DNA of 64,000 bases from IMGVR_UViG_3300045135_002615:186001-250000; one strand, 5' to 3'; shown: positions 14,130 through 41,277, numbered from the stretch's first letter. The notes: generated by a model from the letters alone, not told the origin. Program-made: numbers and translations.

Positions 14130-14890
14130 TGGAGAACCAAATTTTTAATGAGTCCTGTTTAGACACCATGAGCCGTATGGGAGAGGGGACTATAGACTTA
14201 GTGGTTACAAGTCCCCCTTACTTTAACGCCCGCGAGTACAGCCAATACTCTGATGTCTCGTCTTATATGGAGACGATGAAAGAAATCTTTACAGAGGTTT
14301 ATCGGGTCTTGGGTGAGGCTAGGTTTCTAGCGGTCAATATATCCCCCGTCTTAGTCTCAAGAGAGAAGAGGAATGATGAGAGTAGGCGTATCCCTCTACC
14401 CTTCTACTATGTGCCTATGCTTGAGGAGATAGGTTTCTTATTTCTTGAGGACATTATATGGAAGAAGCCTGATGGGGCTGTGTACAACAGAACAGGGAAA
14501 TTCTCAACGCACCTCCGACCTCGTGCTTACAAGCCTAACTTGGTGACTGAGTATATCCTTGTGTTTCGTAAGCCGTCTGAGAAAATCTTAGACGCTTATC
14601 TCAAGGTGGGGTCACTTGTAGGGGAGAGTTATGAACGCACAAATGTGTGGGAGATGAACCCTGAGACACACAGCGACCACTCGGCTCCTTTTCCCGAAGC
14701 CCTGCCCTATAAGCTCATCGAGTACTACTCTTACGAGGGTGAGCTCGTATATGACCCCTTCTTAGGGTCAGGGACTACCGCTAAGGTGGCTAAGATGACC
14801 AAACGGAAGTACCTCGGCTCAGAGATCAATGGAGATTACTTCAAGATAGCCCAAAAGAGGATAGACCAAACACAGGAGTACTTCTTCTGA
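14129..14890 (+). CDS. DNA amino-methyltransferase, beta class (m4C/m6A)
   Basis: TSPPY, HSAPFP, DPFLGSGTT. Confidence 0.92.
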   Translation: MENQIFNESCLDTMSRMGEGTIDLVVTSPPYFNAREYSQYSDVSSYMETMKEIFTEVYRVLGEARFLAVNISPVLVSREKRNDESRRIPLPFYYVPMLEEIGFLFLEDIIWKKPDGAVYNRTGKFSTHLRPRAYKPNLVTEYILVFRKPSEKILDAYLKVGSLVGESYERTNVWEMNPETHSDHSAPFPEALPYKLIEYYSYEGELVYDPFLGSGTTAKVAKMTKRKYLGSEINGDYFKIAQKRIDQTQEYFF

Positions 14891-15690
14891 TGGAGAACCA
14901 TATTTTTAACGAGACTTGCTTAGATACCATGAGCCGTATGGGAGACAACTCCATAGACCTAGTGGTCACTAGCCCACCCTATGATAATCTCAGAACCTAT
15001 GATAACGACATAGATCAGACATGGGGTGAAACGGTTTGGAAGCCCATCATTTCTGAACTCTCTAGGGTAATCAAAGAAGGTGGTGTTATCGTTTGGGTTG
15101 TGAATGATGCCACCATTGATGGGGATGAGACAGGTACGAGCTTCAAACAGGCACTCTACTTTAAAGAGTGTGGTTTGAAGCTGTATGACACTATGATCTT
15201 TCAAAAGTCAGGGTGTGCCTCTCCTAGTAAGAAGAGGTATTACCCTTCTTTTGAGTATATGTTTGTATTCTCAAAAGGTCACCCTACTACATTTAACCCA
15301 ATCTTAGATCGGGAGAACAAGTGGAGAGAGAGATGGGGGAAGAAGCGAAAGAAGAGAAAAAAAGATGGTTCTTTCGGAGCAGACTATGACACCAAAGAAG
15401 CCCCTCAATTTGGTATGAGATATAACATATGGAAGTACCATCAGGGCTTCCAACGAAGCGGAGAGGATATCTTCGAGCATCCTGCCACATTTCCCGAAAA
15501 CCTAGCCCACGACCATATTATCTCTTGGTCTAACGAGGGAGATGTAGTTTACGACCCATTCTTAGGGTCTGGGACTACCGCTAAAATGGCTAAGATGACC
15601 AAACGTAAATATCTCGGTTCAGAGATCAACGCGGATTACTTCAGGTTAGCCCAAAAGAGGATAGATCAAACACAGGAGTACTTCTTCTAG
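14890..15690 (+). CDS. DNA amino-methyltransferase, beta class; tandem paralogue
   Basis: TSPPY, HPATFP, DPFLGSGTT; termini near-identical to the previous gene. Confidence 0.92.
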   Translation: MENHIFNETCLDTMSRMGDNSIDLVVTSPPYDNLRTYDNDIDQTWGETVWKPIISELSRVIKEGGVIVWVVNDATIDGDETGTSFKQALYFKECGLKLYDTMIFQKSGCASPSKKRYYPSFEYMFVFSKGHPTTFNPILDRENKWRERWGKKRKKRKKDGSFGADYDTKEAPQFGMRYNIWKYHQGFQRSGEDIFEHPATFPENLAHDHIISWSNEGDVVYDPFLGSGTTAKMAKMTKRKYLGSEINADYFRLAQKRIDQTQEYFF

Positions 15691-35420: not shown

Positions 35421-36035
35421 ATGTCATTCACCTACTATGATGAGTACGCTGATTTTGAGCCTGCTCTTATCCCTGTTGATTTAGAGTTTTTCGCCACCGT
35501 ACAACGAGAGCTCACCTTGGACTTCCAAGTGTCCTCATTTTGCGACCTTTACAAGTCCGACCCCAATGATCAAAACCTGCCTTGCGTCTACCCTGCCCTC
35601 CGCCTGATTGGTGAGGATGTTGACTTTGAGAAGATCAAGCTCAACGTAGAGGGTGCTAACCTCGTGGCGACAGACTCCTATATGGAGGATGATTGTCGCG
35701 TGATGGTTTGGGTCTTTGCCCCGACCTCAACAGGCTATGCACAGATTCAGTATGGTGCAGCCTTAGAGGATAAGGCAAAGCTCACATGGTTCTCAACAGA
35801 CGACAACTCTTACTTGGTCTGCGACTTTGATGAGAACCCCGTAAGTGTCACGGATGCGAAGCTCGGTCTTTACCAAGAGATTTACACTCCTGAGAAGAAG
35901 GAGCTACGAGAGGACAACCGCAGGATTTTAGAGTTGCTGAAGAATACGGATAACGGTTTAGAGGTGTCCTCTTACCTTGAGTTGATTCAGCAAAATCTTG
36001 AGAAGATGAAAGAGTGTAACGGTTACACTTGCTGA
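35421..36035 (+). CDS. Acidic hypothetical protein
   Basis: GGAG RBS, 204 aa. Confidence 0.7.
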   Translation: MSFTYYDEYADFEPALIPVDLEFFATVQRELTLDFQVSSFCDLYKSDPNDQNLPCVYPALRLIGEDVDFEKIKLNVEGANLVATDSYMEDDCRVMVWVFAPTSTGYAQIQYGAALEDKAKLTWFSTDDNSYLVCDFDENPVSVTDAKLGLYQEIYTPEKKELREDNRRILELLKNTDNGLEVSSYLELIQQNLEKMKECNGYTC

Positions 36036-36418
36036 TCGGGTTCTGTACCCTCATCTTCAACAGAAGCCTCAGCTTCCTCAGAGGGAGTTGGGGCTTCTTC
36101 GTTTTCTGAGAACAGGGACGCCATCATCTCAGCCATCTTATCTTCGTCCATATCTTCCATTCCCTCGCCCCCAAAGAGACCCGCAAGGGGGTTATCTTGA
36201 CCTTGTAGCATCTCCTCGATGCCACCCTCTGTCTCGGCAGCCTTCATGAGCTTCTCCATATCAAGGTTTCCACCCATAAGGAGCTTCATCATCTCCATGA
36301 TGTCGTTCATGCCGAGTGGCTTCTCAAGCTCTTTACGCTCACGGGCTTTACGCTCCTTGCGGCGTTGCTTGATACGGATCTTCTTCTTGTGTGCGTTACG
36401 TTGTTTCTTGTTCATCAC
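36023..36418 (-). CDS. Hypothetical protein with basic N-terminus and Met/acid-rich C-terminus
   Basis: AAGGAGG RBS. Confidence 0.7.
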   Translation of the reverse strand: MMNKKQRNAHKKKIRIKQRRKERKARERKELEKPLGMNDIMEMMKLLMGGNLDMEKLMKAAETEGGIEEMLQGQDNPLAGLFGGEGMEDMDEDKMAEMMASLFSENEEAPTPSEEAEASVEDEGTEPDQQV

Positions 36419-36494
36419 ATACCTCCTTATCGGTGTCTTGTCTTATACCGATAGTATAAAGAGGTATATGGCAACACAGTACGGAGAGCGAACA

Positions 36495-37094
36495 ATGATA
36501 GAGATTAAGATAGGAGATTGCGTAGATCGCCTCAAAGACCTAGAGGACAACTCCGTTGACGCAATCATCTCAGACCCACCTTATGGTGTGAAGTATATGG
36601 AGAGTGGGTGGGACGATATAGGAGAAGGCTCGCAACAGAGAGAGTGGCACAGAGCTTGGTTGAAGGAAGCTCATAGGGTTCTTAAATGTGATGGTGTCCT
36701 CAAAGCGTTCTCTAGTGCTAAAACCCTGCATCATTTAACCTCTGCTATGGTCGAGGTAGGATTCGTAAACCTCTTAGTCGAGGCATGGGTTTACACAAGT
36801 GGTATGCCGACAGGAAACTACGATATGGCTAAAGGCATCGAGGCAACTATCCTGTTTGGAGACTCGAATAAATCAACATTCAAAAAACTTAAAGGGACTC
36901 GTAAAGAGGGCAAAACGGGGTATGCCAAACTTAGAGTAGAGCAAGGTACTAGAGCCACAGATTATGGTCTTTCATCTAGTGCATTTGACCTTGAGCCTCA
37001 AACTAAAGAGGGATCTCTTTACATGGGCTATGGTACTACCCTTAAGAAGTCATGGGAACCTATTTGTATCGGGGTTAAGAGATGTCACTCTTAA
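36495..37094 (+). CDS. Split methyltransferase, catalytic (DPPY) subunit copy A1
   Basis: SDPPY ... GYGTTLKKSWEPI; no FxGxG motif. Confidence 0.85.
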   Translation: MIEIKIGDCVDRLKDLEDNSVDAIISDPPYGVKYMESGWDDIGEGSQQREWHRAWLKEAHRVLKCDGVLKAFSSAKTLHHLTSAMVEVGFVNLLVEAWVYTSGMPTGNYDMAKGIEATILFGDSNKSTFKKLKGTRKEGKTGYAKLRVEQGTRATDYGLSSSAFDLEPQTKEGSLYMGYGTTLKKSWEPICIGVKRCHS

Positions 37095-37143
37095 CGATGA
37101 TGAAGGGGCTTCTCGGTTCTTTAAACAGTTCAAGAAAGAGTAA
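37093..37143 (+). pseudogene. Remnant 3' end of a middle (B) subunit
   Basis: Reads NDDEGASRFFKQFKKE*, matching the end of 37693-38301. Confidence 0.75.
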
Positions 37144-37146
37144 CTA

Positions 37147-37696
37147 ATGATAGAGATTAAGATAGGTGATTGTGTAGATCGCCTCAAAGACCTAGATGAC
37201 AACTCAGTTGATGCAATCATCTCTGACCCCCCTTATGGGCTCAAGTTTATGTCTAAAGGTTGGGATGACATAGGTGAGGGTAGTCAACAAAGGGAGTGGC
37301 ATAGGAAATGGTTAACCGAAGCTCATAGGGTTCTTAAACCTAATGGGGTACTCAAAGCCTTCTCAGGGTCGAGGACATTCCATCACCTGATAGGGATGAT
37401 GGAAGAGATAGGCTTCTCAGATTTATCCGTAGAGGCTTGGACATATGGTTCTGGCTTCCCCCAAATCACATAACGTGGCTCTTGGCATCGACAAGAAACG
37501 TGGTCACGGGAACAGGGGTCGGGCGATACCCACAGCGTCAAGGTATCAAGCCTCAGATAAAGAGGAGGAGAACAAGCTCACCTCAAACCCTGTGGAGGAG
37601 TACAGGGCTAAGACGGAAGCCTCCGCACCTTTTGAGGGATGGGGGACAGCTCTAAAACCCGCATGGGAGCCCATTTGCATAGGAGTTAAAAAATGA
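37147..37696 (+). CDS. Split methyltransferase, catalytic subunit copy A2; frameshift at a C5 run (37458-37462)
   Basis: SDPPY; YGSGFP|KSHN motif broken by one extra C; ends WGTALKPAWEPI. Confidence 0.8.
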
Positions 37697-38301
37697 TTAT
37701 CACGTTACTGAGAAAGCCCTTAGAGGGGAGCGTAGCAGATAACGCCCTTAAACATGGTTGTGGGGCTATCAACATAGATGGCACTAGGGTGGGTACAGAA
37801 GCTCGCTCTTACAAAGGTGCAGGTAAAACCGATAAGGTTTACTCTGAGAGTGGGGCAGGTATGTTAGACGGCAGAGGGAAAGATATGGAGTTCTCTGTAG
37901 AGGGTAGGTGGCCTGCTAACTTCATTCTTACTCACCTTGATGGCTGTGAAATAAAAGGCACTAAGAAAGTTAAATCGGGTACTGCTTATCAGGACAAGAG
38001 GGCGGGGATCAATCATGTATACAGTGCCAATTTGGGTCCAAATGTAAAGGGAAAAGCAGGGTATGCAGATGAGGAGGGGAAAGAGGAAGTGGCGGATTGG
38101 GCTTGTGTAGAGGGTTGCCCTGTCATAGAGCTTGACCAACAAAGTGGACATCTTAAAAGTACGACAAGAAAACCCACAGGAAATCCGATATACCCTACCT
38201 CAAACACCTCAGTCACATGGAACCCAAACAATGTGATGGACACATCACAACGAGGGTTCAATGATGAGGGCGGGGCTTCTCGGTTCTTCAAGCAGTTCTA
38301 A
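37693..38301 (+). CDS. Split methyltransferase, middle (variable, putative target-recognition) subunit B
   Basis: RKPL, GAINID, GRWPAN, GGASRFF. Confidence 0.8.
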   Translation: MIITLLRKPLEGSVADNALKHGCGAINIDGTRVGTEARSYKGAGKTDKVYSESGAGMLDGRGKDMEFSVEGRWPANFILTHLDGCEIKGTKKVKSGTAYQDKRAGINHVYSANLGPNVKGKAGYADEEGKEEVADWACVEGCPVIELDQQSGHLKSTTRKPTGNPIYPTSNTSVTWNPNNVMDTSQRGFNDEGGASRFFKQF

Positions 38302-38335
38302 TATCGCGGTATGCGATTACACTAAGGAGAGATAA

Positions 38336-40252
38336 ATGAAAGACATGATTGATTACTTTAAAACGATGATTACCCCACCTGTAGAGGATGCTCTTGTGCT
38401 CGTAGCTAAGCCTTCTGAGATTGCTTATGATGAGTATATTCAGGAGGTCTTAGAGGAGGGTGAACTCGCACCTACTAGGGAGCCTATGGTTCACGGAGTC
38501 ATCCTCTTGGAAGAGCCTACAGATGAAGAATCTAAGCAGCTACTTTCCATCTTGAAGCCAGGTGGACATGTTGTACTGATCCCTGTAGACCCGATTGGAT
38601 ACAAGGGGGTGGTCGCCCTTGAGGACACAGGGTTTGAGGTACGAGATGCAATCTTTGTAGCAGATGATCCATATACCTTTTACTACACATCTAAGGCGAG
38701 TAGAACTGAGAGAGAAGCAGGGCTTAAGTCTAAAGATGGTAGTAGAGCCAACACCCACCCTTGCCTCCACCCCAGAGCAGATGTGCTCACAGATAGAGGG
38801 TATCGTCCTATCGAAGACATTAAGATTGGCGATAATGTCTATACTTCATCGGGGACGTTCCATAAGGTAGAGTATGTCTCCCGTCATCCTTACACTAGCC
38901 CATGCCTATATGAGATCTCAGTGCAAGGAACTAACTACACAACGCTCAGTTCTGATAATCATCCTTTCTTAATCTACCGCCCCGTTCGTAAGTCTAATGC
39001 TATTGTAGGAGGCTCTGTGGGATGGGTACAAGGCTGTGATATTCGTAAGGGGGACTATACGATGACCCCTGTCTTTAAAGAGCCTGTCGAAGACTCTCCT
39101 CTATCTCAAGATTCTTATGAGGGTTGGTTTGTGTTTGGGCTATGGGTTGCTGAGGGGGTTCTCCATACTTCGGGAGGGGGGTCCAACAGATACCCTTCTT
39201 TCACAATCAACTCAGAAAAGATCGAGCTTATTGAAACGATCAAACGTGTGTATTCTTCTGTGAATGTCTCAGTCTACGAAAAGCAAGGGAACGCAGTTCA
39301 AGTGGTGGCTTTTTGTCGAGACAAGGGGGAGGAGTACTTCCGTCTAGCAGGTAAAGGGGCGGGCACTAAGTCTCTCGACCCAAGCATATGGAAACTGAGC
39401 CTTTCAGAGAGACAAGCAATCTTAGATGGTTATATGGCAGGAGATGGGTGTGTAATTCGCTCATATACTCAAGCCAAAACGGTATCGCCTGATTTGGCTA
39501 GTCAGATGAGATTACTAGCCCACTCTGTAGGTCTTAAAGCAAACCTGTTTCGTTATGAGGGGAGTGTCGGAAGGGGTATTGGAGATCGTAAGTTTAAAAG
39601 CACCCTTCCTGAACACCATCTTAGATTTTACTCTAAGAACTTGAAACAAGCGAGAGGGGGCGGTTCAAGGAAGCCGAGCCGACCCACTATTATAAACCAT
39701 GAGGGAGTTGATTTTGTACTCTCCTATATTAAGTCTGTGGTGGAAGTTCCTTATGTAGGAGATGTCGTGAACCTCTCTGTTGAAGGCGACCCTACCTTTC
39801 AGACTGCTGTAGGTATGAGTCACAATACAGTGAAGCCCATAGGGATTATGGAGTGGTGTGCTAGGGACCTTGAGCCTAACTCTAAAGTCGCAGAGCCCTT
39901 CATGGGTTCAGGTACTACGGGTATCGCCATGAGCCGTCTTGGGCACGACTTCGTGGGTATAGAGCTGAACAAAGAATATGCGGAACTCAGTGAATCTTGT
40001 ATAAGGCATTGGATGCCCATTGGCACAGAGATCAAATCTGAGGCAGATGTGGGCAAAGCAGAATCTGCTCAAGGAGGGCAGGTATCTATTTTGACATCTT
40101 CGGATAGGAGACAACAATATGACACGTTATTGTGTTGCAACAGGAGAGAGTGCCAAGAGAGCCTTCTTGAAGGCAAAGGAGGAGAACCCTTTCCTAGACC
40201 CTTACAAGGCTTACTTCATCGAGAACTCGCATTGTGTATACAGCTTCGCTGA
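38336..40252 (+). CDS. Split methyltransferase, SAM-binding subunit C with intein; true stop probably 40107
   Basis: KAS..ER, HP|TVKP, PFMGSGTT; probable 1-nt slip at T4 (40089-40092). Confidence 0.85.
   Translation: MKDMIDYFKTMITPPVEDALVLVAKPSEIAYDEYIQEVLEEGELAPTREPMVHGVILLEEPTDEESKQLLSILKPGGHVVLIPVDPIGYKGVVALEDTGFEVRDAIFVADDPYTFYYTSKASRTEREAGLKSKDGSRANTHPCLHPRADVLTDRGYRPIEDIKIGDNVYTSSGTFHKVEYVSRHPYTSPCLYEISVQGTNYTTLSSDNHPFLIYRPVRKSNAIVGGSVGWVQGCDIRKGDYTMTPVFKEPVEDSPLSQDSYEGWFVFGLWVAEGVLHTSGGGSNRYPSFTINSEKIELIETIKRVYSSVNVSVYEKQGNAVQVVAFCRDKGEEYFRLAGKGAGTKSLDPSIWKLSLSERQAILDGYMAGDGCVIRSYTQAKTVSPDLASQMRLLAHSVGLKANLFRYEGSVGRGIGDRKFKSTLPEHHLRFYSKNLKQARGGGSRKPSRPTIINHEGVDFVLSYIKSVVEVPYVGDVVNLSVEGDPTFQTAVGMSHNTVKPIGIMEWCARDLEPNSKVAEPFMGSGTTGIAMSRLGHDFVGIELNKEYAELSESCIRHWMPIGTEIKSEADVGKAESAQGGQVSILTSSDRRQQYDTLLCCNRRECQESLLEGKGGEPFPRPLQGLLHRELALCIQLR
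38762..39826 (+). mobile_element. Intein with LAGLIDADG homing endonuclease (355 aa)
   Basis: HP|CLHP...SHN|TVKP; NHPF; FGLWVAEG and LDGYMAGDG. Confidence 0.93.
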
Positions 40253-40523
40253 GGCGTTGTTTAGCAAAGACAAGTTCTTAGGGCACACCCGTAACAAGTC
40301 CTGTAGGGCGTTAGTTCTAGAGGGTGGTGTCGGGTACTTCTTCTTCATCGACCCACCTGAGAGGACTCTTGAAGATATAGAGTCTTGTGTGGACCACTTG
40401 AATGAGAAGGATACCCCGATTACGGATCGTATCCTCAAGGGTCTAGAAGATGAGTTAGTCAAGTGTGGTATGACCCAAGAGGATGCTCTCATCAAGATTG
40501 ACGAGTTGCTCCATGATCTTTGA
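40119..40523 (+). CDS. Hypothetical protein
   Basis: AGGAG RBS. Confidence 0.65.
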   Translation: MTRYCVATGESAKRAFLKAKEENPFLDPYKAYFIENSHCVYSFAEALFSKDKFLGHTRNKSCRALVLEGGVGYFFFIDPPERTLEDIESCVDHLNEKDTPITDRILKGLEDELVKCGMTQEDALIKIDELLHDL

Positions 40524-41277
40524 GAACTCAAGGACGAGGCTACATCTTGGTGACTGCACTCAAGATAACTTTTTCACAGAGCCTTTCATCGACCTGACAG
40601 TCACATCACCTCCGTACAATCTCAGCATAGAGTATGAAGACCATGATGATGGTGGTTCTTATGGGGACTACTTGGACTTCTGCACTCAGTGGATGACCAA
40701 CTTGTACAGATGGTCTAAGCCTAACGCTAGGTTCTGTTTGAACATCCCTTTGGACATCCAGCTGGATGGTTCTCGCTTCATTAGTGGTGATTTAACACGA
40801 GTGGCACTTGAGTGTGGTTGGCATTACAGGACTTCTATCATATGGCATAAAAACCAAGTGACTTCGAGGACTGCATGGGGTAGTTGGATGTCTCCAAGTG
40901 CTCCAATGGTGATTGCTCCTGTTGAGATGATCCTTGTGTTCTACAGAGATGATTGGAAGAAGCCCGATTTAAACGGATTGGGTACTGATCTCAGCAAGGA
41001 AGAGTTCATTAAATGGACAAGTGGGATGTGGTCTATGGCTACGGAGTCTGCGAAGCGTATAGGACACCCTGTACCCTACCCCATAGAGCTACCCCATCGT
41101 TGTATCAAAATGTTCAGTTGGATCGGGGATACTGTATTTGACCCATTTGCGGGGTCTGGGACGACCCTCATCGCCGCCCACAATTCTAAGCGAGACGCAG
41201 TAGGCGTTGAGCTTTCCAAAACTTATTTTGATCTTGCTGTGGAGCGTTTCTCTAAAGAGTGCTTCACGTTGCTTTAA
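40513..41277 (+). CDS. DNA amino-methyltransferase, beta class
   Basis: TSPPY, TAWGSWMSPSAP, HPVPYP, DPFAGSGTT. Confidence 0.92.
   Translation: MIFENSRTRLHLGDCTQDNFFTEPFIDLTVTSPPYNLSIEYEDHDDGGSYGDYLDFCTQWMTNLYRWSKPNARFCLNIPLDIQLDGSRFISGDLTRVALECGWHYRTSIIWHKNQVTSRTAWGSWMSPSAPMVIAPVEMILVFYRDDWKKPDLNGLGTDLSKEEFIKWTSGMWSMATESAKRIGHPVPYPIELPHRCIKMFSWIGDTVFDPFAGSGTTLIAAHNSKRDAVGVELSKTYFDLAVERFSKECFTLL

What the first reader, a model, noticed from the sequence alone, without database searches (positions are those of the whole stretch)
36495..40252. Three-gene split methyltransferase with duplicated, swappable modules
A phage beta-class MTase type that I recall as one chain (DPPY...GFPKS...ALKPAxEPIxxARKP...GRWPAN...ASRFFYxxKAS...HPTVKP...FxGSG) is here cut into A (catalytic DPPY), B (variable region) and C (SAM-binding, with intein). 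The cuts look evolved: A ends EPICIGVKK, B restarts IITLLRKP, B ends SRFFKQF, and C has its own RBS and a degenerate copy of the LKPGGH/GFEVRD segment. The order is A1, remnant of B1 (37093-37143), A2, B2, C, so several A/B modules may share one C. Inference: combinatorial methylation specificity for anti-restriction.
Basis: partly seen in the sequence, partly recalled or inferred. Interest (0 to 1): 0.72.

Follow-up and report, generated by a model that had tools for sequence, protein, structure and literature searches.

The report
Three-piece phage DNA methyltransferase with swappable modules
A marine jumbo phage encodes a DNA methyltransferase split into three separate, translationally coupled genes. 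The split is conserved and under selection in many uncultured phages, which carry varying numbers of the first two pieces upstream of one shared third piece. This probably lets them methylate several DNA motifs to escape host restriction.

Summary

**Layout, window 36495-40252**
- A1: intact catalytic DPPY half.
- B1: a deletion scar.
- B2: intact recognition module.
- C: SAM-binding half, interrupted by a LAGLIDADG intein (38762-39826). Its last codons are frameshifted.

**Evidence that the split is conserved**
- All 27 related viral loci have A, B and C as separate ORFs cut at the same residues.
- The ORFs are joined by ATGA or TAATG overlaps.
- dN/dS is 0.03-0.22.
- Arrays range from ABC to BABAABA..C, and always end in a single C.

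**Evidence that the pieces work together**
- Natural fusions exist: A-B-C, B-C, C-A and B-B-B-C.
- A complex prediction scored 0.86 against a best control of 0.35.
- A model of a natural C-A fusion shows that A plus the C-terminal half of C form one canonical Rossmann methyltransferase domain.
- The N-domain of C is a conserved pseudo-catalytic half (EPT in place of DPPY) that lies outside that fold.

**Other points**
- B is a mosaic of three hypervariable segments that assort independently.
- This genome retains only one intact set: A1 + B2 + C.
- Combinatorial specificity and anti-restriction remain inferences.
- No characterised member or paper was found.

The parts
36495..37094 (+). A1: intact catalytic-half module (motifs IV-VIII, DPPY), class 'alpha'. 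It ends IGVKRCHS because the usual ATGA stop is mutated. An alternative in-frame start lies at 36469.
   Evidence: ORF and translation. PF01555 positions 1-111, 45.8 bits. 80% identical to the L018 A module with dN/dS 0.12. Homologous to the N-terminal halves of M.RsrI and CcrM.
37082..37146 (+). B1 remnant: the B start codon plus 4 codons, joined out of frame to the last 17 codons of a B module (tail 37093-37143). It is followed by a normal B-to-A junction.
   Evidence: Sequence. Direct repeat D4, 39 nt, 85% identical to the B2 tail. B-profile positions 191-208, E 7e-5. Junction comparison.
37147..37696 (+). A2: catalytic-half module, class 'beta', interrupted by a +1 frameshift in the five-C run at 37458-37462. 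This gives ORFs 37147-37473 and 37445-37696.
   Evidence: A is continuous in 21 relatives. A relative in run X2 lacks one C at 37458, and the source-sample contig is identical to the window.
37693..38301 (+). B2: intact target-recognition module (202 aa) with RKP, GRWPAN, DWACVEGCP and GGASRFF motifs and three variable segments. It overlaps A2 by ATGA.
   Evidence: It maps to residues 179-305 of single-chain phiPsal1 gp045. No Pfam or PDB match. It is the only intact B in the genome.
38336..38761 (+). C, N-extein: pseudo-catalytic N-domain (HG.ILL.EPT in place of D.IISDPPY; LKPGGH; GFEVRD), followed by motif X (FYYTSKAS..ERE) up to NTHP.
   Evidence: residues invariant in 14 C proteins. SD AGGAG lies 9 nt upstream.
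38762..39826 (+). Intein (355 aa) with a LAGLIDADG homing-endonuclease domain. It starts with Cys1 and ends His-Asn, with Thr at +1. It is inserted in the HP|TVKP motif.
   Evidence: LAGLIDADG_3 at 29.8-32 bits. Hint_2 at 25-26 bits, below its cut-off. Boundaries. All 14 relatives have HPTVKP uninterrupted. Related populations give no coverage here.
39827..40252 (+). C, C-extein: SAM-binding half (TVKP, FMGSGTT, VGIEL). The last codons are frameshifted by loss of one T in the run 40089-40092. The ancestral stop lay near 40105.
   Evidence: PF01555 positions 160-220. Relatives end ..SIFD(I/L)F. Relatives X2 and X3 carry the extra T. Sequence.

Best explanation
The locus encodes a naturally split beta-class DNA amino-methyltransferase, probably N6-adenine because motif IV is DPPY. 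It is made of three separately translated subunits.

**The three subunits**
- A carries the catalytic half of the Rossmann fold (motifs IV-VIII) plus a variable loop.
- B is the target-recognition domain.
- C carries a conserved pseudo-catalytic N-domain, motif X, and the SAM-binding half (motifs I-III).

**How it works**
- The genes are translationally coupled by ATGA or TAATG overlaps, with a Shine-Dalgarno sequence inside the upstream gene's last codons.
- The proteins assemble non-covalently. A completes the fold of the C-terminal half of C in trans. The conserved ends of B and the last strands of the C N-domain clamp onto A.
- In related phages, arrays of several divergent A and B modules precede a single C. 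One SAM-binding scaffold can then serve several catalytic and recognition modules.
- Recombination at conserved junctions and at conserved segments inside B reshuffles the modules.

**State in this genome**
The array has eroded to one usable set: A1 + B2 + C. C must first splice out its intein. A2 and B1 are broken.

**Shown versus inferred**
- Shown: gene anatomy, conservation, selection, mosaicism, natural fusions.
- Predicted in silico: assembly and fold complementation.
- Inferred: enzymatic activity, multiple specificities, and an anti-restriction role.
For: **Conserved split**
- All 27 IMG/VR loci have A, B and C in different frames with identical cut points. A ends IGVKK in 21 of 21 modules. 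B starts MII(T)LRKP in 22 of 22.
- Junctions are conserved at the nucleotide level.

**Selection**
- dN/dS is 0.03-0.22, with dS about 1 or saturated. This holds both against relatives and between paralogues in one locus.

**Arrays**
- ABC, BAC, AABC, BABC, ABBA..BC and BABAABA-deaminase-C all end with one C.
- Flanking genes are not conserved, so the cassette travels or persists as a unit.

**Natural fusions** among the 150 best of 220 clusters at E below 1e-30
- About 82 are B-C fusions without DPPY, and 50 are C only.
- About 8 are C-A fusions, and there are single-chain A-B-C forms with the N-domain (P0009, P0142).
- One protein has three complete B domains fused to C (P0063).

**Complex prediction**
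- For L024 A+B+C, ipSAE was 0.86 against a best control of 0.35. In the tool's calibration that mark was reached by 58 of 80 solved complexes and 2 of 110 mismatched pairs.
- A's DPPY strand (residues 20-29) and C's FxGSG strand (163-171) both lie in the interface.

**Fold model of the natural C-A fusion P0010**
- pLDDT was 78.5.
- Residues about 110-425 (SAM half plus A) align as one Rossmann methyltransferase domain, at Z 18-19.5 with 170-177 residues aligned.
- The N-domain lies outside that alignment.

**Collinearity and mosaicism**
- A, B and C are collinear with single-chain phage methylases, with residues duplicated at both cuts.
- The three variable segments of B assort independently. 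Identity is 15-27% in the variable segments and 69-84% in the conserved spacers.
- Close relatives in estuary samples have other module orders.
Against: - There is no biochemical, transcript or methylome evidence.
- The complex prediction used my own shallow alignments, so its calibration holds only roughly. The model may also be re-assembling a familiar single-chain fold from memory.
- C folded alone gave a poor model (pLDDT 53.6), so nothing independent is known about the N-domain.
- The window's own copy carries three lesions: the A2 frameshift, the B1 deletion and the C tail frameshift. It may be on its way to being lost.
- A B-less C-A locus exists (L040), so B may not be strictly required.
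- Free A modules also occur next to a fused A-B-C gene (L038), which the simple model does not explain.
Confidence: 0.8

Rival explanations
1. Fixed pairs or spare cassettes rather than combinatorics. Each A works only with a cognate B, or only one set is used at a time. The extra modules would then be recombination reservoirs or decaying duplicates, and arrays would not multiply specificities.
For: In the window the extra modules are indeed broken: the A2 frameshift and the B1 deletion. Truncated or hybrid B modules occur in L009, L018, L019, L020 and L033. A and B counts are often 1:1.
Against: L014/L015 carry 4 A and 3 B modules, all intact. Paralogues there have dN/dS 0.15-0.22 and dS about 1, so each copy is maintained. 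The same A variable-loop type is followed by different B types in different loci, and the B variable segments assort freely. Unequal counts such as 2 A: 1 B and 1 A: 2 B do not fit strict pairs.
Confidence: 0.3
2. Recoding. Ribosomal frameshifting or read-through at the junctions makes one continuous A-B-C polypeptide, so the split is only apparent.
For: A-to-B junctions are A-rich (GTTAA(G/A)AAATGA). In the window this gives six A in a row, which could slip by -1. A few relatives really are single chains.
Against: In the downstream frame a TAA stop lies directly before the ATG in nearly all junctions. The A-run is not conserved as a slippery heptamer. B-to-A and B-to-C junctions have no slippery sequence. 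Orders such as B-A-C would give a non-collinear fusion. Each downstream gene has its own SD and ATG.
Confidence: 0.04
3. Random decay or a sequencing artefact of a single-chain methyltransferase gene.
For: The window does contain two homopolymer frameshifts and one internal deletion.
Against: The A|B and B|C cuts are at identical residues in 27 loci, with strong purifying selection. An independent assembly at depth 17 is identical to the window. The three lesions are additional to the conserved cuts, not the cause of them.
Confidence: 0.02
4. The pieces do not act together. C could be a stand-alone inactive SAM-binding or DNA-binding protein, and A and B could have other partners.
For: C has a complete-looking set of secondary-structure elements of its own (pseudo-half plus SAM half). 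A and B alone have no characterised relatives.
Against: A, B and C are always adjacent although their flanks differ. Natural fusions occur in several orders. Complex and fold predictions agree. A lacks any SAM-binding motif, and C lacks motif IV.
Confidence: 0.05

Closest known systems
Single-chain beta-class phage DNA methylases of the 'HindIII-like' / GRWPAN type (for example Pontimonas phage phiPsal1 gp045, Mycobacterium phage Ukulele gp94)
   Same: The motif order is the same: DPPY, GFPKS, LKPA.EP, RKP, GRWPAN, GGASRFF, KAS..ER, HPTVKP, F.GSG. A, B and C cover them collinearly at 34-47% identity in the conserved parts.
   Different: They are one polypeptide with no pseudo-catalytic N-domain before motif X and no module arrays. 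In the window's family the residues at each cut are duplicated on both sides (EPICIGVKK / IITLLRKP; SRFFKQF / FYYTSKAS).
Solved beta-class N6-adenine methyltransferases (M.RsrI, CcrM, M1.HpyAVI, M.BceJIV, M.MboIIA)
   Same: A matches their N-terminal catalytic halves (E 2e-11 to 3e-7). C matches their C-terminal SAM-binding halves (E 4e-14 to 9e-9).
   Different: In those enzymes both halves are in one chain. They form homodimers of complete folds (PMC7544214). Here a single fold is shared between two chains.
M.AquI and M.EcoHK31I, natural two-polypeptide cytosine-5 methyltransferases
   Same: A DNA methyltransferase whose conserved motifs are divided between separately encoded polypeptides that are both needed. 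In M.AquI the cut lies in the variable region (PMC3404938).
   Different: They are C5 enzymes of cellular restriction-modification systems, with two pieces and one copy of each. They have no arrays, no pseudo-half domain, and are not beta class.
Multispecific cytosine-5 methyltransferases of Bacillus phages (SPR, phi3T, rho11s) (from my own knowledge, not checked here)
   Same: One catalytic core serves several tandem target-recognition domains, which lets a phage protect itself against several host restriction enzymes. The B-B-B-C fusion proteins (P0063 and others) are a direct parallel.
   Different: There all domains are in one chain and the enzyme is C5. Here the recognition and catalytic modules are separate subunits.
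Type I restriction-modification methyltransferases (M2S1) with mosaic HsdS
   Same: There is a separate specificity subunit, with variable recognition regions between conserved spacers that recombine. The specificity gene is translationally coupled to the methylase gene (EcoKI: PMC3510504, PMC3874165).
   Different: HsdM is a complete gamma-class fold, and HsdS does not complete any fold. Type I systems are cellular defence systems with a nuclease. This is an orphan phage system.
MettL3-MettL14 and ciliate MTA1-MTA9-p1-p2 complexes
   Same: They are beta-class enzymes in which an active DPPW subunit works with a partner whose motif IV is eroded (EPPL, NALW). In ciliates there are also separate DNA-binding subunits (PMC7544214). 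The N-domain of C has EPT at the equivalent place.
   Different: Those partners are complete methyltransferase folds that dimerise. Here the pseudo-element is only a half-fold attached to the real SAM-binding half.

Membership tests
Beta-class DNA amino-methyltransferase (Pfam PF01555 N6_N4_Mtase) | Sequence match above Pfam's gathering score | tested here: met
   A1 45.8 bits, first part of A2 52.6 bits and C 43.9 bits, against a cut-off of 26.7. Each covers only part of the model: positions 1-111 for A and 160-220 for C.
Beta-class DNA amino-methyltransferase (Pfam PF01555 N6_N4_Mtase) | Motif IV (D/S)PP(Y/F) lies N-terminal to motif I F.G.G, with the recognition domain between them | tested here: met
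   The gene order A (DPPY), B, C (FMGSGTT) reproduces the beta order, collinear with single-chain relatives. Some relatives have the orders B-A-C or C-A.
Beta-class DNA amino-methyltransferase (Pfam PF01555 N6_N4_Mtase) | Both halves of the fold lie in one polypeptide | tested here: not met
   Stops separate A, B and C in the window and in 27 of 27 related loci.
Beta-class DNA amino-methyltransferase (Pfam PF01555 N6_N4_Mtase) | SAM-dependent methylation of adenine N6 or cytosine N4 in DNA | not testable with these tools
   Inferred from DPPY and from homology to M.RsrI and CcrM.
Naturally split (multi-polypeptide) DNA methyltransferases such as M.AquI | Conserved motifs are divided between separately translated polypeptides, and the arrangement is conserved and selected | tested here: met
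Naturally split (multi-polypeptide) DNA methyltransferases such as M.AquI | The polypeptides associate, and all are required for activity | tested here: inconclusive
   Support is in silico only. The complex score was 0.86 against a best control of 0.35. Natural fusions exist. The fused form folds as one Rossmann domain. No experiment has been done.
Multispecific phage methyltransferases (several recognition modules, one core) | More than one intact recognition module is served by one catalytic/SAM core | tested here: not met
   In the window only B2 is intact and B1 is a remnant. The feature is met in relatives: L014 has 3 B and 4 A, L016 and L018 have 2 or more B, and P0063 has 3 B fused to C.
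Multispecific phage methyltransferases (several recognition modules, one core) | Each recognition module confers a distinct target sequence | not testable with these tools
   The only evidence is the hypervariability and mosaic structure of the B segments.
Class 1 intein with LAGLIDADG homing endonuclease | Cys/Ser at position 1, terminal His-Asn, and a nucleophile at +1 | tested here: met
   The intein starts with Cys1 (CLHP...) and ends ...SHN, followed by Thr at +1.
Class 1 intein with LAGLIDADG homing endonuclease | Removing it restores an uninterrupted conserved host motif | tested here: met
   NTHP + TVKP equals the HPTVKP that is invariant in 14 intein-free C proteins.
Class 1 intein with LAGLIDADG homing endonuclease | Hint and LAGLIDADG domain matches | tested here: inconclusive
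   LAGLIDADG_3 scores 29.8-32 bits, above its 22.5 cut-off. Hint_2 scores 25.1-26.2 bits, below its 28.4 cut-off. Splicing activity was not tested.

The most novel reading that the evidence does not exclude
Uncultured marine (mostly jumbo) phages carry a combinatorial methylation system. Interchangeable catalytic-half subunits (A) and mosaic recognition subunits (B) assemble in any pairing on one shared SAM-binding scaffold (C). The scaffold's pseudo-catalytic N-domain acts as the docking platform. An array of m A and n B genes could then give up to m x n target specificities, for example 12 in L014. Recombination at conserved junctions would continually re-deal the modules in an arms race with host restriction systems.
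Probability: 0.35. Interest if true: 0.88.

Novelty: new variant of a known kind. Interest (0 to 1): 0.77.

Why it matters
- If the pieces assemble as predicted, this would be a beta-class DNA methyltransferase whose single Rossmann fold is shared between two polypeptides with a third recognition subunit. I found no described natural example.
- It forms a large family: 220 clusters at E below 1e-30, almost all metagenomic and viral. Public annotation lists the members only as 'hypothetical protein' or 'DNA modification methylase'.
- It offers a natural system for studying fold complementation.
- It suggests a route by which phages multiply methylation specificities cheaply.
- It gives a ready-made modular scaffold for engineering methyltransferases with swapped recognition modules.
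- It warns annotators that short 'partial' methylase ORFs in phage genomes may be functional subunits rather than pseudogenes.

Tried and rejected
- **Nucleotide search:** the region found nothing among 50,697 phage records.
- **Isolate phages:** a protein search with the N-domain of C found no isolate phage carrying that domain. It found only matches to the true A region of HindIII-like methylases, plus one metagenomic megaphage.
- **C folded alone:** AlphaFold2 gave a poor model (pLDDT 53.6), and its Foldseek matches were meaningless.
- **B against solved structures:** only a chance-level ferredoxin-like match, E 0.63.
- **Promoters and terminators:** the scan was not above shuffled expectation, so it gives no operon evidence either way.
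- **Flanking synteny:** neighbours are not conserved between loci, apart from a weak homologue of the 134-aa ORF in L007/L008.
- **Cellular genomes:** a scan of 185,579 species genomes gave only 4 loci, all in metagenome-assembled bins, so there is no host clue.
- **Literature:** five searches found no description of natural split beta-class methyltransferases or module arrays.
- **Programmed frameshifting at the junctions:** rejected, because a stop sits in the downstream frame just before each ATG and there is no conserved slippery site.
- **A2 frameshift as an assembly error:** rejected, because an independent assembly of the source run is identical at depth 17. Only contigs were available, so minority in-frame variants cannot be excluded.
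- **RNA evidence:** no RNA run was shown to hold the region. The run search was made with kind 'any' and was not a dedicated RNA search.


Full report
**Setting**

The window is bases 186001-250000 of a 296,642-bp viral record, estimated 95% complete. It is therefore a jumbo phage. The probable source is a seawater metagenome. The genome holds three complete PF01555 methyltransferase genes in addition to the locus examined here.

**Anatomy in the window**

All genes are on the + strand.
- **A1 (36495-37094):** an intact 199-aa protein with DPPY that matches only the first half of the Pfam methylase model.
- **B1 remnant (37082-37146):** a start codon and four codons, joined out of frame to the last 17 codons of a B module. 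A normal B-to-A junction follows it.
- **A2 (37147-37696):** a second A module, 77% identical to A1 over the first 105 residues. It is split into two ORFs by a five-C run at 37458-37462.
- **B2 (37693-38301):** overlaps A2 by ATGA. It has no Pfam family.
- **C (38336-40252):** has its own AGGAG ribosome-binding site. It consists of:
  - an N-domain;
  - motif X;
  - a 355-aa intein (38762-39826: Cys1, LAGLIDADG domain, His-Asn, Thr at +1) inserted in HP|TVKP;
  - the F.GSG SAM-binding half.
- **C tail:** the last codons are frameshifted by loss of one T in the run 40089-40092. The ORF therefore runs about 50 codons into the next gene.

**Are the lesions real?**

Logan's independent assembly of the probable source run gives one 11.7-kb contig at depth 17 that is identical to the window over all 4,001 bases laid. 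Related populations in estuary samples have one C fewer at 37458 and one T more at 40088. They lack the intein. They also join the modules in other orders, with an A1-type module directly followed by B, and a B tail followed by an A1 start. The lesions are therefore real mutations of this population. Module content differs even between close relatives.

**Is the split evolved?**

A scan of IMG/VR with B2 returned 27 loci from contigs up to 375 kb.
- In every locus A, B and C lie in different frames.
- The cuts fall at the same residues in all loci:
  - A ends IGVKK in 21 of 21 modules;
  - B starts MII(T)LRKP in 22 of 22 and ends GGASRFF.QFKK..;
  - C starts M..MI.YF.
- Almost every junction is an ATGA or TAATG overlap.
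- The codons for the last residues of A contain a GGAG Shine-Dalgarno sequence for the next gene.
- A stop in the downstream frame lies just before its ATG.
- dN/dS is 0.03-0.22 with synonymous sites near saturation. This holds for A, B and C against relatives and between paralogues within one locus.

This rules out decay. It also makes recoding into a single chain unlikely.

**Arrays**

The loci read ABC, BAC, AABC, BABC, ABBA-B'-B-C and BABAABA-[dCMP deaminase]-C. There is always exactly one C, and it is always last. Flanking genes are not shared between loci.
- The first 106 residues of A are 84-91% identical across loci. The loop between GFPKS and LKPAWEP is only 35-48% identical, and it falls into a handful of types.
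- B has four conserved segments (69-84% identity). They separate three hypervariable segments (15-27% identity) whose types assort independently. This is the signature of recombination.

**Do the pieces work together?**

1. **Collinearity.** A, B and C cover single-chain phage methylases collinearly. About six residues are duplicated at the A/B cut and about four at the B/C cut.
2. **Natural fusions.** A profile of C searched against 1.84 billion representative proteins found 220 clusters at E below 1e-30. Of the best 150:
   - about 82 are B-C fusions that lack DPPY;
   - 50 are C alone;
   - about 8 are C-A fusions;
   - two or three are A-B-C single chains that keep the N-domain of C;
   - one is B-C-A;
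   - several carry two or three complete B domains fused to C.
   Such fusions are classical evidence that the parts act in one complex.
3. **Complex prediction.** The A, B and C proteins of the simple locus L024 scored 0.86, against 0.35 for the best control. The tool's verdict was 'supports binding'. In its calibration that mark was reached by 58 of 80 solved complexes and 2 of 110 mismatched pairs, and because my own alignments were used those counts hold only roughly. The interface includes A's DPPY strand, C's F.GSG strand and motif X helix, residues 88-122 of the C N-domain, and the conserved motifs of B.
4. **Fold model.** An AlphaFold2 model of the natural C-A fusion P0010 had pLDDT 78.5.
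   - Residues about 110-425, that is the SAM half plus A, align as one canonical Rossmann methyltransferase domain.
   - The matches are to Trm14, Trm11, TrmN and TrmI, at Z 18-19.5 with 170-177 residues aligned at 2.1-2.9 Angstrom.
   - Residues 1-109 stay outside the alignment.
   So A, not the pseudo-half, completes the fold of C.

**The N-domain of C**

The N-domain resembles the A region of single-chain relatives (LKPGGH..GFE.RD) and has a beta-alpha pattern like a half Rossmann fold. In place of D.I.SDPPY it has HG.ILL.EPT, which is invariant in 14 proteins. It occurs in nearly all proteins of this clade in which A is separate or permuted. It is absent from the classical single chains. 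I infer that it is a docking or stabilising platform for A. This is analogous in spirit to the eroded-motif partners MettL14 and MTA9 of other beta-class enzymes (PMC7544214). The role is an inference only.

**What this genome can do**

The whole genome has one intact B, one B remnant, one intact A, one frameshifted A and one C. At most one enzyme, A1 + B2 + spliced C, can be made. Even that depends on the altered tail of C being tolerated. An A1-class module followed by B and C is the only set seen on the L031 contig, so that pairing is plausible.

**Comparison with known systems**

The parts belong to the beta-class amino-methyltransferases: A matches M.RsrI and CcrM, and C matches M.BceJIV, M1.HpyAVI and CcrM. 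The defining single-chain arrangement is not met.
- Natural two-polypeptide methyltransferases are known only for C5 enzymes, M.AquI and M.EcoHK31I (PMC3404938).
- Multispecific Bacillus-phage C5 enzymes, known to me but not checked here, and Type I HsdS shuffling (PMC3874165, PMC3510504) are functional analogues.
- All close homologues are metagenomic. They are named 'hypothetical protein' or 'DNA modification methylase'.
- Only four loci occur in 185,579 species genomes, all in bins.
- Five literature searches found no description.

**Verdict**

The finding is real, and it is a new variant of a known kind. It is a tripartite, translationally coupled, modular beta-class DNA methyltransferase family of uncultured phages. 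The window's copy is a partly eroded member that also carries an intein.
- The split and its conservation are shown.
- Assembly is predicted.
- Multiple specificities and an anti-restriction role are inferred.

Noticed in passing
window 38762-39826: C carries a 355-aa intein with a LAGLIDADG homing-endonuclease domain, inserted exactly in the invariant HP|TVKP motif. None of the 14 related C genes, nor the related estuary populations, has it.
   Followed up: yes
L009:3238-5001: An A module of a 375-kb relative carries an insertion of about 400 aa after AWSYG. It starts CLCEDTEILT and ends ..FVTGN followed by S. This looks like a second, different intein, ending Gly-Asn instead of His-Asn, in the GSGFPK motif. 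It has no Pfam match.
   Followed up: partly
window 40089-40092 and 37458-37462: Two homopolymer-length mutations lie within 2.7 kb: T5 to T4 at the end of C, and C4 to C5 in A2. Both are confirmed by an independent assembly, and both sites are in-frame in close relatives.
   Followed up: yes
L014:9185-9646 (also L015): A dCMP/cytidine deaminase gene (PF00383, 72 bits) sits between the last A module and C. Its GTG start lies 4 bases before the end of the A gene.
   Followed up: partly
B modules, alignment A2 (window 37693-38301): Four cysteines are invariant in 22 B modules (HGCG, GCE, DWACVEGCP). This suggests a structural metal site. The only PDB hit is a chance-level match to a ferredoxin-like C..CP motif.
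   Followed up: partly
window 40483-41277; 14192-14857; 14953-15657: The phage has three further complete single-chain PF01555 methyltransferase genes. The one next to the locus has SPPY rather than DPPY, as N4-cytosine enzymes often do.
   Followed up: partly
P0063, P0059, P0056, P0055, P0050 (search hits): Some relatives fuse two or three complete B recognition domains in tandem to one C in a single polypeptide of up to 899 aa.
   Followed up: partly
L038 (TARA scaffold, 34 kb): A fused A-B-C gene (P0009) is preceded by several free A-type genes and two small complete methylase genes. The simple three-subunit model does not explain why free A modules sit beside a fused enzyme.
   Followed up: partly
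window 40119-40523: The 134-aa ORF just downstream of C has no family match. It does have a 30%-identical homologue immediately upstream of the module array in L007/L008.
   Followed up: no
window 36023-36418 (- strand): A divergently oriented 131-aa ORF is extremely rich in Lys/Arg at its N-terminus and in Glu/Asp/Met at its C-terminus. It has no family match.
   Followed up: no
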